Shown here: one piece after another, positions 32,558 through 50,437 of the stretch | How positions within the stretch are numbered: the stretch's first letter is position 1 | How the letters are laid out: each line of letters starts with the position of its first letter | Origin: Macrostomum lignano | Lineage: Eukaryota | DNA: 64,000 nucleotides | Direction of reading: 5' to 3' | Assembly: GCA_002269645.1 (NCBI GenBank) | Contig: NIVC01000202.1 | Location: forward strand, 434,001-498,000 | The notes under the pieces: generated by a model | The model's database searches: none | Seen by the model: the letters and a program-made list of their open reading frames with translations, nothing else | Told to the model about the DNA's origin: nothing | Translations under genes and position numbers: made by a program

Positions 32558-33833
32558 CTAAATCTGGCACATCAAAGCTGACTGCTGCTTCAGTAGCTGA
32601 AAAAGCAGAAACAGAGGCAGTACAGCGATCAGCCAGTTTGCGACCCTGCTAGTGCTGGCGTCCTTGGTCTCGGCTTTGGGTCTCCAGGGAGGATTTTTGG
32701 GTGGCGGTGCTAGATTTGCAGCTGAAGTGAAATTAGGAAAATTCAAATGGGCGCGCTGTATTCGAATCGTGTGAAATTTTACGATCAAGCAGAGAATACC
32801 GAGCGCAGTAGCATGAGGCCACCGAGAAATGAGAAAGCGATGTCGGTTGCATTTCTATTCGTTCTTCTACATTTCAGCCAGAAACTGTACTTTTGACATT
32901 TTTGTCGGAACTAGAAGCGAATCCCACTCAGAATAGGTGATTGATCTGATCACCCAAACGCTTTAAACTATCTCACAGAAATCGCGAGAAAATGATTAGC
33001 ATCGTTCAGTCGAAGGATAAATAAGCAGAATTGCGACCAACAGGGAAGTAAGTATTTGATTTGCCTAAATTGGGTCAAATTCACTCCTTCTGCTGTTGGC
33101 ATTCTATCTAAAGCGAGACAGTGAGACTGTGCGACCATAAGACACTACTGTTACAGGACAAACGGTTTTGGCCTTTAGAAAAATTACAAAAAAACATTCA
33201 CTCACTAGGGTTCGACCCCGGAGCTGCAGTAGGCGGCGGAGCAGGTGTGGGTTTCGGTTGGCCTGAAATTTGAGTTGCGAGCTGAGTCTTGCAAGAGAGA
33301 TATGAATCTGGCTGGAGGGGCTGGAGAGGGGTGAAGAAGGCTGGAGAGGGCTGAAGAGGGCTCGAGAGGGCTGGAGAGGGCTCGAGAGGCCTGGAGAGGG
33401 CTGGAGAGGGCTCAAGAGGCCTGGAGAGGGCTGGAGAGGGCTCGAGAGGCCTGGAGAGGGCTGGAGAGGGCTCGAGAGGCCTGGAGAGGGCTCGAGAGGG
33501 CTGGAGTGGGCTCGAGAGGGCTGGAGAGGGCTGGAGAGGGCTGGATAAGGGCCTGGAGAGACAGGGGTGACAGGGAGATGGGAGGAAGAAAATCGGATAA
33601 ATGGAGAGCAAGGGATACGAATGCATTGGGATTTGGACTGGGTCAGGCGGAAAGTAGGATGTGGGGAGTTGGAGCGGCTCTGTGCAAGACGGGTATATGA
33701 CTGGAGTTGAGTAGACAGGCAGCAGATATGAGTTCAGTCGGCCTGACTTACTTTTCTTGGAAGATGAACACGCCTCGCTGCAGAGCAGTGCTGCAGCAAG
33801 ACAGCTCAGAAGCAGCAGCCATCGGACAGACAT
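32558..33833 (-). CDS. Small Pro-rich surface protein family, copy 1 (signal peptide plus GPI/TM-like C-terminus); exons 33833-33752, 33262-33206, 32721-32558
   Basis: MSVRWLLLLSCLAAALLCSEACSSSKK|SQPKPTPAPPPTAAPGSNP|[54 protein letters not shown]. All introns are GT-AG phase 1. Confidence 0.85.
33305..33560. repeat. (GGGCTGGAGA)n 10-bp repeat in copy 1 intron 1
   Basis: Seen directly. The same motif occurs at about 36290-36440, 37890-37940, 44030-44280, 45050-45160 and 49570-49800. Confidence 0.9.
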
Positions 33834-34689
33834 CTTCAATGCAGAAAAAGCAGCAGAAGCGCTTTGAACTCGAAAGCTTGAGATGTCGAATTCGACTGAC
33901 GACAAAAGTTTTCTGCAAAGTCGGTCTTCTCTCTGCGGATGAAAAACGTAACTCGATAGCCAGAAGCTCTATTTTTTCGGTTTCATTTATAGACAAGTAC
34001 CAGCTTGAACCGCTGGGTTGCTTGAGGCTGATAATTTTCTATATACTAAAAATAAATGTGCCCATAATTCTTGTTTGCGAGCCTCTTAGCTGCTGAGCTG
34101 CAGCCATAGACAGTTCTGTACAAAGCGATTCCTGTCTCTCTAGCAGCGTCAGAGGGCCTACGATTGTCTATGCCAAAACACCAACCATACGGGTATGCGG
34201 AGCCGTGCACTTTTTTGCAATGCAAGGGAAACCCAATTTAATTGGGTTCAAGGAAATTCACTTTAACAGTCTGAATTACCCCATGTATATCCGCAAATCA
34301 AACGGTATTTAAGGCAAATATGGCCAAAATGCTTTGCCCCAGCAGTAACCGGGCCTCCAACCCCGTTTTTGCGCAACAATGCAACAAGCGCAACCACAGC
34401 GGCCATTATTGAATAGAGTTATAATTTTAACACTGAGACCCTATTATAAGTGTTTCGCTGCAGAAGTGTTTTGCACAGTTTGCTTTAGTAACCAAGTGAC
34501 CAAGTCTGCATTTTCAATGATGAAACAACGCGCCTGAAGTACCCATGCAAGCGAGTGACAAATTAGTCTTTAGATGGAGAAGACATGCGGCTAATGCATA
34601 TTATACAAGAACCTAATTATTTGGAGCGTTGCGGGTCGCGGTGATGCAGCAGGATTCGCCCGGCCGGTTTAAGCTTCAGCTGGAGGTAG

Positions 34690-35340
34690 GCTTATTTATG
34701 CTCGGCTATCCACAGATACAAACTAGCAGTCTTGAGCATTGTGGTGACCAGGTCCTGCAACGGTGTGTCTGAAGTGCGGGATGAAGCGGCGATAGAATCC
34801 GATGGTGCCGAGGAATCCGCGTAGAGCCTGGAAGTTCGTTGAACCGACCACTCGGGGATGGTTGCTACCTCAGAGTCAAGGGGTTGAATGCCATCAGCGG
34901 ACACTAGATGACCTAGGAAGGTGATTTACTGCTGCAGGAAAACGCACTTGCTTAGCTGGACTTTCAGATCGTGCAGTTTTATGCGTTGGAGTCCAAACGG
35001 CGTAATAATGGCTGTCTTTAGAATGTCGTCTTCAGCGATTGAAATCTGGCAATAGGCGCGAACCAGATCTACGCTCGTAGCTTGGAGTAGAACTGGGTTT
35101 CATGGAGGCGCCGCGTGAAGCACCGTATGTGGGGCACTGGTTAGTGATCCACTTGGGTGATCTTATCTAGTCCACGGCAACCCTCACAGAGTCGCTATTT
35201 GCCGTTGGGCTTGCCATCGTCCTTCTTAAGTGCCATGTAATGCGGAGATGCGGGGATTGCAGTGGCCTGGATAGGCTAGTGAAACGGCGAGATGTCCGCG
35301 GCGGTCACCGGCAGTGTGCAGTCTTGTCGGCGGTGGATCA
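34690..35340 (-). mobile_element. Decayed Gypsy reverse transcriptase fragment with internal deletion
   Basis: The minus strand gives HMALKKDDG, DLVRAYCQISIAEDDILKTAIITPFG, then jumps to KCVFLQQ*ITFLGHLVSADGIQP. The YxDD segment is missing. Confidence 0.75.
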
Positions 35341-48787: not shown

Positions 48788-49286
48788 AATTGGATCAATT
48801 TTTTGCCTTTTCGACTGCAGGAAAATAACTGCCGATCCGAATAAGTTGGCAGTTCAAGGACCCTTTGGCATTCCTAACTAAATAAAAAACTTGACTTTTG
48901 TGAATCGATTTCCTTCTCTCAGGTTCAAGAACTCCTTTAGATGATCCTTTGACTGATTAAGACTGCAGGCTCAAAGATTCTCTTAAAAAAGCTGTTACAC
49001 TTGAAAACCGTCAAACCTTGCACTGCAATAAAAGTGCACGGCTCCGCGTGCCCGTATGGCCCGTTTTGCCATAGACAATCGTCGTCCCTCTGACGCTGCT
49101 AGCGAGACAGGAATCGCTTTGTACAGAACTGTCTGTGGCCGCAGCTCAGCAGCTAAGAGGCTCGCAAACGTTTGGTCTCACCCTCGGAGCGAAGACCGAC
49201 TTTGCAGAAAACTTTTGTCGTCAGTCGAATTTGACATCTCAAGCTTTCGAGTACAAAGCGCTTCTGCTGCTTTTTCTGCATTGAAG

Positions 49287-50437
49287 ATGTCTGTCCGATG
49301 GCTGCTGCTTCTGAGCTGTCTTGCTGCAGCACTGCTCTGCAGTGAGGCGTGTTCATCTTCCAAGAAAAGTAAGTCAGGCCGACTGAACTCGGATCTGCTG
49401 CGTGTCTACTCAACTCCAGTCATATACCCGTCTTGCACAGAGCCGCTCCAACTCCCCACATCCTACTTTCCGCCTGACCCAGTCCAAATCCCAACGTACT
49501 CGTATCCCTTGCTCTCCATTTATCCGATACTCCTTCCTCCCATCTCTCCGTCTCTCCAGTCCCTTATCCAGCCCTCTCCAGCCCTCTCCAGCCCTCTCCA
49601 GCCCTCTCCAGCCCTCTCCAGCCCTCATCAGCCCTCTCCAGCCCTTTCTAGCCCTCTCCAGCCCTCTCCAGCCCACTCCAGCCCTCTCCAGCCCTTCTCC
49701 GGCCCCTTCAGCCCCTCCAGCCCTCTCCAGCCCACTCCAGTCCTCTCCAGCCCTCTCCAGCCCCTCCAGCCTCTCCAGCCCTCTCCAGCCCTCTCCAGCC
49801 AGTTTCATGTCTCTCCAGCAAGACACGCAACTCAAATTTCAGGCAAACCGAAACCCGCACCGCCTCCGCCTCCGCCTCCGCCTACTGTACCTCCGGGCTC
49901 CAACGCCAGTAAGTGAATTATTTTGTCAGTAATTTTTCGAAAAAGCCTTGCAATGGAAGTGTGTCTCATTCCACCGTCGCACAGTCTCACTCTGTCTCCC
50001 ATCGTCGCACTGTCTAAGTCCCTTCTGACTGCGTCTCTCTTCCCCGCTATCTTAATCAGTCTCGTAGTCTCACTGTCTCACACTGTATCACTATATCACT
50101 CTCTGGCTCTTTTACCGTCTTACTCAATTACTCACCCACCGTCTCACTGTCTCACCACGTCACTGTCTGCCTTCACCCCACTGGATGCACTTTACTATAT
50201 CTCAGCTACGTAGCGCTTCAACCTAAATCGAATTCGAGTACAATACGCCCTTTTAATCTTCCTAATTTCACTCCAGCGCTACCACCACAGCAGCCGCCCA
50301 TAGGCCCCAAACGACCCGACGCCGAGACCAAGGACGCCAGCAATAACAGGGTCGCAAACTGGCTGATCGCTGTACTGCCTCTGTTTCTGCTTTTTCAGCT
50401 ACTGAAGCAGCAGTCAGCTATGATGTGCCAGATTTAG
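49287..50437 (+). CDS. Small Pro-rich surface protein family, copy 4 (102 aa); exons 49287-49368, 49843-49908, 50277-50437
   Basis: MSVRWLLLLSCLAAALLCSEACSSSKK|SKPKPAPPPPPPPPTVPPGSNA|TLPPQQPPIGPKRPDAETKDASNNRVANWLIAVLPLFLLFQLLKQQSAMMCQI*. It is an inverted near-duplicate of copy 2. Confidence 0.87.

What the first reader, a model, noticed from the sequence alone, without database searches (positions are those of the whole stretch)
32558..50437. Unannotated family of four tiny membrane-tethered Pro-rich proteins
Seen: four complete spliced ORFs that are invisible in the ORF track as whole genes. Each has a near-invariant 27-aa exon 1 (signal peptide plus CSSSKK), a short Pro-rich middle exon, and a last exon ending in small residues followed by [25 protein letters not shown]. 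All introns are phase 1, and the frame is preserved despite in-frame indels. Established: signal peptide plus small-residue omega region plus terminal hydrophobic stretch is the GPI-anchor architecture; a short TM with a ~10-aa tail is the alternative. Inference: a lineage-specific expanding surface family of ~50-aa mature peptides (glycocalyx, recognition or gamete function). I recognise no known family.
Basis: partly seen in the sequence, partly recalled or inferred. Interest (0 to 1): 0.85.

Follow-up and report, generated by a model that had tools for sequence, protein, structure and literature searches.

The report
Chimeric mini surface-protein genes, flatworm
Four real, spliced mini-genes of the flatworm Macrostomum lignano encode about 100-residue proline-rich proteins whose secretion signal exon is shared with a WSC-domain gene and whose membrane-anchor exon is shared with the neighbouring ADAM protease gene. 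It is a tidy example of new genes made by exon shuffling, not a major new system.

Summary
Four complete genes of 3-4 exons (A-D) lie at the stated coordinates, with canonical GT..AG sites and only phase-1 introns. They encode proteins of 98-119 aa: a signal peptide, a Pro-rich middle and a C-terminal hydrophobic tail.

The window is Macrostomum lignano NIVC01000202.1:434001-498000. "Unannotated" is wrong. A, B and C are called here; B, C and D match GenBank hypothetical proteins, D only on two sister contigs. The annotation is transcript-based.

The family is a mosaic.
- The terminal exon, with the intron before it and the 3' flank, is homologous to the last exon of the adjacent ADAM metalloprotease gene.
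- Exon 1, with its 5' flank, intron 1 and a phase-1 mini-exon, is homologous to a WSC-domain secreted-protein gene on another contig.

No other relatives appeared among 1.84 billion representative proteins, and there were no Pfam or PDB hits.

Exon 1 and the tail are 93-100% identical between paralogs (dS about 0.1). The mature middle is nearly unconstrained (dS 0.4-1.0, dN/dS about 0.6-0.7) but always stays in frame. A GPI anchor is favoured over a transmembrane helix but is unproven.

Best reading: young, lineage-restricted "headless stalk" surface peptides. Interest is moderate to low.

The parts
32558..33833 (-). Gene A, 100 aa. Exons 33833-33752, 33262-33206 and 32721-32558.
   Evidence: Model built with canonical GT..AG sites and phase-1 introns. 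The annotation calls a 100-aa product starting at the same ATG; its sequence could not be compared with my model. Intact on the two sister contigs.
37091..38175 (-). Gene B, 98 aa. Exons 38175-38094, 37848-37783 and 37239-37091.
   Evidence: The GenBank entry PAA88084.1 (Mlig033002g1) has the same CDS limits.
43544..45769 (+). Gene C, 119 aa and 4 exons: 43544-43625, 44331-44393, 45199-45252 and 45609-45769. The second Pro-rich mini-exon comes from an internal duplication of the minisatellite plus mini-exon unit.
   Evidence: GenBank entry PAA88085.1 (Mlig004676g1).
49287..50437 (+). Gene D, 102 aa. Exons 49287-49368, 49843-49908 and 50277-50437. It is not called on this contig.
   Evidence: The protein is 100% identical to PAA78457.1 and PAA85135.1 (Mlig012955g2/g3), which are called on contigs 689 and 344. 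No gene is called at this position in L001.
51835..51998 (-). Terminal exon of the neighbouring ADAM gene. It is the fifth copy of the tail module and encodes [54 protein letters not shown].
   Evidence: tblastn and alignment A2 (intron, tail and 3'UTR are all homologous). The annotated ADAM proteins P0129 and P0007 end with this sequence. The intron before it is phase 1.
51835..62175 (-). ADAM-type metalloprotease-disintegrin gene (PAA88086.1, 771 aa). The active-site motif [12 protein letters not shown] is present. There is no cytoplasmic domain.
   Evidence: Pfam hits to Reprolysin, Disintegrin, ADAM_CR and EGF on the exon translations. Annotation, protein sequence, ATG coordinate.
33310..33560 (.). 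10-bp minisatellite (CTCTCCAGCC on the gene strand) in the intron upstream of the Pro-rich mini-exon. The same array occurs at 37891-37959, 44016-44283, 45044-45158 and 49552-49800. A separate array lies at 36281-36439.
   Evidence: Tandem Repeats Finder and alignment A1. A related Pro/Ser-coding repeat sits at the same place in the WSC-type copy at L007:2196-3204.
32184..32428 (-). Conserved block of about 250 bp, lying about 110-510 nt downstream of the stop codon. Copies lie at 36720-36962(-), 45949-46169(+), 50546-50803(+) and 51322-51567(-, behind ADAM).
   Evidence: The copies are about 90-96% identical in pairwise BLAST, while the proximal 3'UTR is only 54-64% identical in C versus the others. 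No Rfam hit and no unusual fold. Function unknown.
34073..34227 (-). Conserved upstream block, presumed to be a promoter or 5' region, in front of A. It also lies before B (38276-38428) and D (49016-49169), and occurs three times in the WSC locus L007.
   Evidence: Self-BLAST at 90-91% identity. L007 hits at 1927-2085, 6812-6932 and 9801-9883.
39496..39534 (-). Relic of exon 1 (MSVR*LLLLACLS) between B and C.
   Evidence: tblastn, E = 0.016. It contains a stop codon and no other gene parts were found next to it.

Best explanation
A-D are a young tandem family of chimeric genes, so far detected only in Macrostomum lignano. Each encodes a secretory precursor with three parts:
- a cleavable signal peptide (exon 1);
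- a 48-67-residue basic, Pro-rich, unstructured stalk with one N-terminal Cys;
- a C-terminal anchor signal (last exon).

The family was assembled by phase-1 exon shuffling. The 5' cassette (promoter-proximal region, signal-peptide exon, minisatellite-bearing intron and symmetric mini-exon) comes from a WSC-domain secreted-protein gene family. The 3' cassette (stalk and anchor exon, 3'UTR and a downstream block) comes from the neighbouring mucin-stalked ADAM protease gene.

Inferred product: a 'headless stalk' tethered to the outer face of the plasma membrane. A GPI anchor is most likely (about 55-60%); otherwise a short transmembrane helix with a 10-aa tail.

The targeting modules at both ends are kept nearly identical between paralogs, by purifying selection together with gene conversion. 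The displayed middle drifts or diversifies freely, as long as it stays in frame and Pro-rich.

Shown: anatomy, module homologies, conservation pattern, and annotation from transcripts.
Inferred: cleavage sites, GPI attachment, surface location and any physiological role.
For: - Gene models and splice phases.
- Organism and existing transcript-based annotation.
- Intactness: all 12 copies on 3 contigs are intact, with the same gene order A(-) B(-) C(+) D(+) ADAM(-).
- Tail homology: the tail exon, the preceding intron and the 3' flank are homologous to the ADAM terminal exon. A profile hit to the ADAM C-terminus has E = 1e-5 against 1.84e9 proteins.
- Exon 1 homology: a profile hit to WSC protein PAA77628 over residues 1-31. 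DNA homology covers the 5' flank, exon 1 and intron 1, with the same phase-1 mini-exon layout.
- Donor direction for the tail: the closest ADAM paralog (P0009/P0133) also has a mucin stalk and a classical GPI-type end. More distant ADAMs have a transmembrane helix plus a cytoplasmic tail.
- Conservation pattern: exon 1 is 93-100% and the tail 93-97% identical at the nucleotide level. For C versus the others, exon 2 is 57-60%, the stalk 42-55% and the 3'UTR 54-64%. dS is about 0.05-0.15 at the ends against 0.4-1.0 in the middle.
- Coding constraint: every middle exon is a multiple of 3 in length (57, 66, 63, 54, 66 nt), and the gaps in the DNA alignments of the coding stalk of A, B and D are multiples of 3.
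- No globular domain: AlphaFold2 predicts helices at residues 3-21 and 66-100 and a low-confidence coil between them.
- Tail hydrophobicity: the 15-residue core (WLIAVLPLFLLFQLL) contains Pro and Gln. The best 19-mer sums to +4 kcal/mol on the Hessa scale, within the range of reference GPI signals and unlike a true transmembrane helix (scale values and reference sequences recalled from memory).
Against: - No direct look at RNA-seq reads, expression site or protein was possible.
- SignalP and NetGPI were not available.
- The 10 residues after the hydrophobic core (KQQSALMCQI) are atypical for a GPI signal.
- dN/dS of 0.6-0.7 in the mature part, and the lack of any conserved residue pattern there, fit weak or absent function of the displayed peptide.
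- Low dS in exon 1 and the tail shows that protein-level selection alone does not explain their conservation.
- No homologs from other Macrostomum species could be examined, so the age of the family and its long-term retention are unknown.
- The donor direction for exon 1 (WSC to family) rests on the deeper divergence among the WSC copies in one 21-kb locus.
Confidence: 0.7

Rival explanations
1. The same genes, but the tail is a true single-pass transmembrane helix. The products would be type I micro-membrane proteins with a 10-residue cytosolic tail, not GPI-anchored.
For: Ten residues, starting with Lys, follow the hydrophobic stretch. AlphaFold2 models residues 66-100 as one long helix. 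VANWLIAVLPLFLLFQLL is 18 residues long, which could span a thin membrane.
Against: The core is only 15 hydrophobic residues and contains Pro and Gln. The best 19-mer sums to about +4 kcal/mol, against -2.9 for a reference transmembrane helix. A conserved block of small residues of the omega-site type lies 5-8 residues upstream in all five copies. In ADAM the segment is even less hydrophobic ([15 protein letters not shown]). Its closest paralog ends in a textbook GPI signal, whereas the M. lignano ADAMs with a real transmembrane helix have long cytoplasmic tails.
Confidence: 0.25
2. Transcribed but functionless by-products of segmental duplication. These would be gene fragments (a WSC 5' half fused to an ADAM 3' end) that still splice and keep an ORF only because they are young and Pro-rich sequence rarely creates stop codons.
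For: The mature region has dN/dS of 0.6-0.7 and is as divergent as the non-coding flanks. No homolog was found outside the species. An exon-1 relic at 39534-39496 shows birth and death in the cluster. Low dS at the ends points to gene conversion rather than protein-level selection.
Against: C differs from A, B and D by dS of about 0.8-1.0 in the middle. Even so, all splice sites, all phases and the reading frame into the tail are intact in 12 of 12 copies. Every middle exon is a multiple of 3 in length, and the gaps in the DNA alignments of the A, B and D stalk are multiples of 3. The signal peptide and anchor are much better conserved than the adjacent introns and UTRs. C gained a second symmetric exon without breaking the frame.
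Confidence: 0.2
3. The repeated units are cargo of a transposable element (captured gene fragments), not host genes.
For: Modules recur with conserved upstream and downstream blocks. A gag-like ORF (PNMA and zinc knuckle) lies between C and D at 46407-47342. A reverse-transcriptase-like ORF lies at 6056-6490 (identified by eye, not scanned).
Against: No terminal inverted or long terminal repeats bracket the units in the self-comparison. In the DNA examined, all five tail copies sit in one cluster next to the donor ADAM gene, with identical order on three contigs. The downstream block was not found alone anywhere in the 64-kb window or in L007. The gag ORF lies outside the units.
Confidence: 0.05

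Closest known systems
Small GPI-anchored mucin-like or Pro-rich surface peptides: CD24 and CD52 of vertebrates, procyclins (EP/GPEET) of Trypanosoma brucei, and arabinogalactan peptides of plants
   Same: The architecture matches: an N-terminal signal peptide, a very short unstructured Pro/Ser/Thr-rich mature part, and a C-terminal small-residue block followed by a hydrophobic signal. The precursors are about 60-130 aa. (The comparison is from my own knowledge of these families.)
   Different: There is no sequence relationship, and no Pfam family matched at E <= 0.01. The stalk is basic, with a polyproline run and one N-terminal Cys. An N-glycosylation sequon is present in only two of the four proteins. 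The tail carries 10 extra residues after the hydrophobic core. GPI attachment has not been tested.
ADAM (M12B reprolysin/disintegrin) proteases with a mucin stalk and a GPI-type end, as in M. lignano PAA88086 and PAA65530
   Same: The last exon is homologous to that of PAA88086: stalk end, small-residue block, the [20 protein letters not shown] tail, the phase-1 acceptor, the 3'UTR and a downstream block. The same membrane targeting is therefore likely.
   Different: The small proteins lack the propeptide, the protease, disintegrin, Cys-rich and EGF domains, and the ADAM signal peptide (MMKLQLMPQ...). They are not ADAMs.
WSC-domain small secreted proteins of M. lignano (PAA77628.1, Mlig013254g1, and neighbouring copies)
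   Same: Shared features are the 5' flank, the signal-peptide exon (82-83% nt identity; MSVRRLLLLSCLAATLLCGLGCLSSKK), intron 1 with a repeat, and a phase-1 symmetric mini-exon.
   Different: The last exon of those genes encodes a WSC domain (PF01822) and no anchor. No WSC relic could be shown in the window.
Schistosome micro-exon genes (MEGs), and toxin or antimicrobial-peptide precursor families with a conserved signal exon and a hypervariable mature part
   Same: These are flatworm secretory genes with symmetric small exons that can be added without breaking the frame. The targeting ends are conserved and the mature region evolves fast. (The comparison is from my own knowledge.)
   Different: There are only one or two middle exons of 54-66 nt, not long series of exons of 36 nt or less. 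No sequence similarity was found, and no alternative splicing has been demonstrated.

Membership tests
GPI-anchored protein (architecture class) | N-terminal cleavable signal peptide | tested here: inconclusive
   The n-region (MSVR), h-region (WLLLLSCLAAALLC) and c-region (SEA|C, small residues at -3 and -1) can be read from the sequence. AlphaFold2 predicts a helix at residues 3-21. No SignalP run was possible.
GPI-anchored protein (architecture class) | Omega site of small residues, a short polar spacer and a C-terminal hydrophobic stretch of moderate hydrophobicity | tested here: inconclusive
   The block [DNS]-A-S-[TAN]-[SN], the spacer RVAN and a 15-residue core are conserved in all 5 copies. 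The Hessa-scale sum is +4 kcal/mol, which resembles GPI signals. However, 10 further residues follow the core. NetGPI and PredGPI were not available.
GPI-anchored protein (architecture class) | Actual lipid anchor (PI-PLC release, loss of the C-terminal peptide) | not testable with these tools
   This needs an experiment.
ADAM / reprolysin M12B family | Metalloprotease, disintegrin and Cys-rich domains | tested here: not met
   The small proteins have no Pfam hit. Only the terminal exon is shared. The neighbouring gene itself meets all of these features.
WSC-domain proteins (PF01822) | WSC domain | tested here: not met
   P0001 and P0003 have no Pfam hit. Only exon 1 and its flanks are shared. 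The weak WSC-like matches in C's intron are not significant.
CD24, CD52, procyclin and other curated small surface-peptide families | Match to the family profile | tested here: not met
   hmmscan of P0001 and P0003 against the whole of Pfam-A found 0 families at E <= 0.01. The PDB sequence search gave only chance-level hits, E >= 0.26.
Schistosome-type micro-exon genes | Most of the CDS lies in many symmetric micro-exons of 36 nt or less | tested here: not met
   There are one or two middle exons of 54-66 nt. They are symmetric (phase 1-1), but exon 1 and the last exon hold most of the CDS.
Chimeric gene formed by exon shuffling | Modules with separate donors, homology that extends into the flanking non-coding DNA, and compatible intron phases | tested here: met
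   Tail module versus ADAM: the exon, the upstream intron and the 3' flank are all homologous. 5' module versus the WSC gene: the flank, exon 1 and intron 1 are homologous. All junctions are phase 1.

The most novel reading that the evidence does not exclude
The conserved ends and hypervariable middle may not be drift. The cluster could be a cassette system that displays rapidly diversifying Pro-rich peptides on the same membrane microdomain as the neighbouring GPI-type ADAM, for example as decoy substrates or regulators of that protease, or as recognition tags. In this reading, the anchor exon together with its conserved 250-bp downstream block acts as a reusable 'anchor module' kept uniform by gene conversion.
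Probability: 0.1. Interest if true: 0.65.

Novelty: new member of a known kind. Interest (0 to 1): 0.33.

Why it matters
This is a clean, fully traceable case of new secretory-pathway genes made by phase-1 exon shuffling. In a regenerating flatworm model with transgenesis and RNAi, a signal-peptide cassette related to one gene family is joined to a membrane-anchor exon from the neighbouring protease gene.

It also points to a subclade of mucin-stalked, probably GPI-anchored ADAM proteases in M. lignano. The sharp mosaic of concerted and free evolution inside a 1-2 kb gene is a useful example for annotation, because exon-level homology is lost in whole-protein searches.

It does not reveal a new biochemical system. 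The products may have only a modest function or none.

Tried and rejected
- Exact look-up of the intronless EF1-gamma ORF to identify the organism found nothing. The organism came from the protein search instead.
- A word-index search with a hand-joined ADAM EGF plus tail peptide returned no hit at E <= 10. Yet the annotated ADAM (P0129) contains that sequence with one residue of difference. I treat this as a tool miss, not as evidence.
- P0006, a 631-aa protein of 12 tandem repeats containing 'NW..LPLFLL', scored E = 1.5e-16 in the profile search. I rejected it as a repeat-inflated chance match.
- A literature search for the three locus tags found no paper. Supplement searches in four M. lignano papers found none of the family genes, and a fifth paper holds no supplement text. 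The only occurrence was Mlig012955g1, which is EF1-gamma, not the small gene.
- I looked for a relic of the WSC exon inside C's long intron. Only two short non-collinear matches appeared (E = 0.3-1.1), so I rejected it.
- I tested the conserved 250-bp downstream block as a structured RNA. There is no Rfam family, and the fold z-scores are -1.6 and -1.1.
- SL trans-splicing just upstream of the ATG is unsupported. The sequence there (..TTTCTGCATTGAAG|ATG) does not fit the published [T/C]TNCAG acceptor motif.
My A sequence is not in the protein collection by exact match, although a 100-aa product is called at the same ATG on all three contigs.

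
Full report
**1. What is there**

A six-frame motif search found CSSSKK four times and RVANW five times. Reading the DNA around them and assembling exons by rule gave four complete genes.

| Gene | Strand | Exons | Protein |
|---|---|---|---|
| A | - | 33833-33752 / 33262-33206 / 32721-32558 | 100 aa |
| B | - | 38175-38094 / 37848-37783 / 37239-37091 | 98 aa |
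| C | + | 43544-43625 / 44331-44393 / 45199-45252 / 45609-45769 | 119 aa |
| D | + | 49287-49368 / 49843-49908 / 50277-50437 | 102 aa |

- Every donor is GTAAGT or GTGAGT and every acceptor is CAG. These are the enriched cis-splice motifs reported for this species (PMC8629364).
- Every intron is phase 1.
- The middle exons are 57, 66, 63, 54 and 66 nt, all multiples of three.
- The 'NFT' sites are intronic. Only B and D have a sequon, NAT.

**2. Organism and annotation**

- D is 100% identical to a Macrostomum lignano hypothetical protein. B and C also match M. lignano entries.
- The window is identical to GCA_002269645.1 contig NIVC01000202.1, positions 434001-498000.
- On this contig the annotation calls a 100-aa product at A's position, B (PAA88084), C (PAA88085) and then an ADAM gene (PAA88086). 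It does not call D.
- D is called on the two sister contigs NIVC01000689 and NIVC01000344.
- The Mlig_3_7 gene set was built from RNA-seq assemblies (StringTie/TACO plus a de novo transcriptome, then TBONE and TransDecoder; PMC5730564). The existence of these models is therefore indirect evidence for spliced transcripts.
- 'Unannotated' is thus wrong, but the genes are uncharacterised. No paper or searchable supplement mentions them.

**3. Copies elsewhere in the genome**

- The order A(-) B(-) C(+) D(+) ADAM(-) is the same on all three contigs. All 12 small genes are intact.
- The three loci differ by only about 1%. Summing the figures by hand gives about 16 differences in 3,807 exon positions against about 200 in roughly 13,000 intron positions. 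They say little about selection.
- They do show that the cluster formed before these loci separated, whether the loci are homeologs or haplotypes.

**4. The tail is the ADAM gene's last exon**

- The fifth RVANW copy lies at 51998-51835 on the minus strand. It is the terminal coding exon of the neighbouring gene, whose exons hit Reprolysin, Disintegrin, ADAM_CR and EGF.
- The annotated protein of this contig (P0129, 771 aa) ends ...SLMNRLP|[54 protein letters not shown].
- The alignment shows homology in the intron before the exon, the acceptor region (ADAM uses an AG 3 nt downstream), the tail, the 3'UTR and a downstream block.
- A profile of B, C and D, searched against 1.84 billion representative proteins, recovered the ADAM C-terminus (E = 1e-5) and nothing else with this tail.
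- Among the M. lignano ADAM paralogs:
  - The closest (P0009/P0133, 56% identity) has a long Thr/Pro mucin stalk and ends ...ASQRRCSLALSLLLPSLTVLLAACFS. That is a classical GPI-type end.
  - More distant paralogs (P0010, P0011) have an ordinary transmembrane helix and a long cytoplasmic tail.
- A stalk plus a tail-less anchor therefore predates the small genes within this ADAM subclade. ADAM is the likely donor.

**5. Exon 1 comes from a WSC-type gene**

- The same profile search hit a 130-aa M. lignano protein over residues 1-31: P0008, PAA77628.1, a WSC-domain protein.
- Its gene lies on contig NIVC01000732 (L007:10001-11711). It shares the 5' flank, exon 1 (82-83% nt identity), the beginning of intron 1, and a phase-1 to phase-1 mini-exon in the same position. 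Its last exon then encodes a WSC domain.
- L007 holds two further matches to the WSC domain. The one at 2196-3204 also has a degenerate exon 1 and a repeat-filled intron.
- It also holds three copies of the 150-bp upstream block found before A, B and D.
- C's exon 1 (..LAATLLCGEGC..) is closer to the WSC form (..LAATLLCGLGC..) than that of A, B and D (..LAAALLCSEAC..).
- The small genes are therefore mosaics: a WSC-type 5' cassette, a Pro-rich mini-exon at the position of the WSC gene's mini-exon, and the ADAM 3' cassette.
- All junctions are phase 1, the classical condition for exon shuffling.

**6. How the parts evolve**

Nucleotide identity between paralogs:

| Segment | Identity |
|---|---|
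| Exon 1 | 93-100% |
| Tail | 93-97% |
| Exon 2 (C versus the others) | 57-60% |
| Stalk part of the last exon (C versus the others) | 42-55% |
| First 150 nt of the 3'UTR (C versus the others) | 54-64% |
| 5' flank (C versus the others) | 53-67% |

- Codon analysis: dS is about 0.05-0.15 in exon 1 and the tail, against 0.4-1.0 in the middle of the same genes. dN/dS in the middle is 0.6-0.7.
- Protein-level selection alone cannot lower dS tenfold. The ends are being homogenised by gene conversion, or are constrained at the nucleotide level, probably on top of selection for working targeting signals.
- The middle is close to neutral. Even so, no copy has lost frame, a splice site or the tail, and the gaps in the DNA alignments of the A, B and D stalk are multiples of three. 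I read this as selection for 'some Pro-rich linker that reaches the anchor', not for a specific peptide.

**7. What the protein looks like**

- Pfam gave no family. PDB gave only chance matches.
- AlphaFold2 predicts helices at 3-21 and 66-100 with a low-confidence coil between them.
- After the likely cleavages, the mature peptide is 48-67 aa. It is 21-36% Pro and has a net positive charge. It has a single Cys, at or within three residues of the N-terminus depending on which cleavage site is used.
- GPI versus transmembrane:
  - All five tails keep a block of small residues, the spacer RVAN, and a 15-residue hydrophobic core containing Pro.
  - A position-independent Hessa-scale sum for the best 19-mer is about +4 kcal/mol.
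  - Reference GPI signals give +1.2 to +4.4, and a true transmembrane helix gives -2.9. The scale values and the reference sequences were recalled from memory, so this is a guide only.
  - The 10 residues after the core are unusual for GPI signals. Thy-1 has a similar extension (from memory).
  - I put GPI at about 55-60%, a short transmembrane helix at about 25%, and the rest on non-function or other fates.

**8. Verdict**

- The finding is real. Its structural reading is largely right, but the family is neither unannotated nor an independent invention.
- It is a young, apparently species-restricted set of chimeric genes made from two donor cassettes. They encode small, Pro-rich peptides that are probably membrane-tethered, and their function is unknown.
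- The kinds are known: small GPI-type mucin-like peptides, and new genes formed by exon shuffling. The particular family is new to the literature.
- Interest is moderate to low.

Noticed in passing
window 32184-32428, 36720-36962, 45949-46169, 50546-50803, 51322-51567: A non-coding block of about 250 bp lies about 110-510 nt downstream of each of the five tail exons. Its copies are about 90-96% identical, which is far better conserved than the proximal 3'UTR (54-64% in C versus the others). It lies beyond the AATAAA that A, B and D carry about 50 nt after the stop codon. There is no Rfam match and no unusual fold. Its function and its genome-wide copy number are unknown.
   Followed up: partly
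window 51835-62175 (-) and proteins P0009/P0133: The neighbouring ADAM has an intact [12 protein letters not shown] zinc site but no cytoplasmic domain. It and its closest paralog carry Thr/Pro mucin stalks and GPI-type ends, which suggests a subclade of GPI-anchored ADAM proteases in M. lignano. The sister contig's model uses an alternative phase-1 donor at 53512 (53578 is used here), which inserts 22 residues ([22 protein letters not shown]).
   Followed up: partly
window 11154-12443 (+): A complete, intronless 429-aa ORF that reads as EF-1 gamma (identified by eye; the ORF itself was not searched). A paper's supplement lists BOX15_Mlig012955g1 as glutathione transferase/EEF1G. That is the same tag prefix as gene D (Mlig012955g2/g3), although the ORF and D are 37 kb apart. 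The shared prefix is unexplained.
   Followed up: no
window 46407-47342 (+): A 311-aa gag-like ORF (PNMA domain plus CCHC zinc knuckle) lies between genes C and D. The spacing between C and D is the same on the sister contig, so it is probably present there too. It could be a retrotransposon relic or a domesticated gag.
   Followed up: no
window 14190-14987 and 27764-28276 (+): Two large exons that probably belong to one rhodopsin-family GPCR. The first hits Pfam 7tm_1 at E = 1e-50; the second was identified only by eye. They are separated by an intron of about 13 kb that contains a 42-bp minisatellite array at 19195-20167.
   Followed up: no
window 589-999 (-): An ORF with a histone fold and a divergent N-terminal part (Pfam Histone, E = 1e-21).
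   Followed up: no
window 56831-56900 (+), inside an ADAM intron: A tRNA-like sequence just above the Rfam tRNA threshold (34.2 bits against 29). ARAGORN does not call it. It is probably a tRNA-derived repeat; a similar peptide-level trace occurs near 38982-39023.
   Followed up: partly
window 28959-29221, 58989-59499, 52113-52975, 55126-55629, 56016-56413, 60849-61418, 62688-63238, 63712-64000: There is a very high density of micro- and minisatellites, including (AGAC)n and (ACAG)n arrays of up to 128 units. Several lie inside ADAM introns, where they create long spurious ORFs.
   Followed up: no
L007:2196-3204 and 6224-6511 (NIVC01000732.1): Two further matches to the WSC domain lie next to Mlig013254g1 and are not called in the annotation. 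The one at 2196-3204 has a degenerate exon 1 without an ATG (LELHWLL..).
   Followed up: partly
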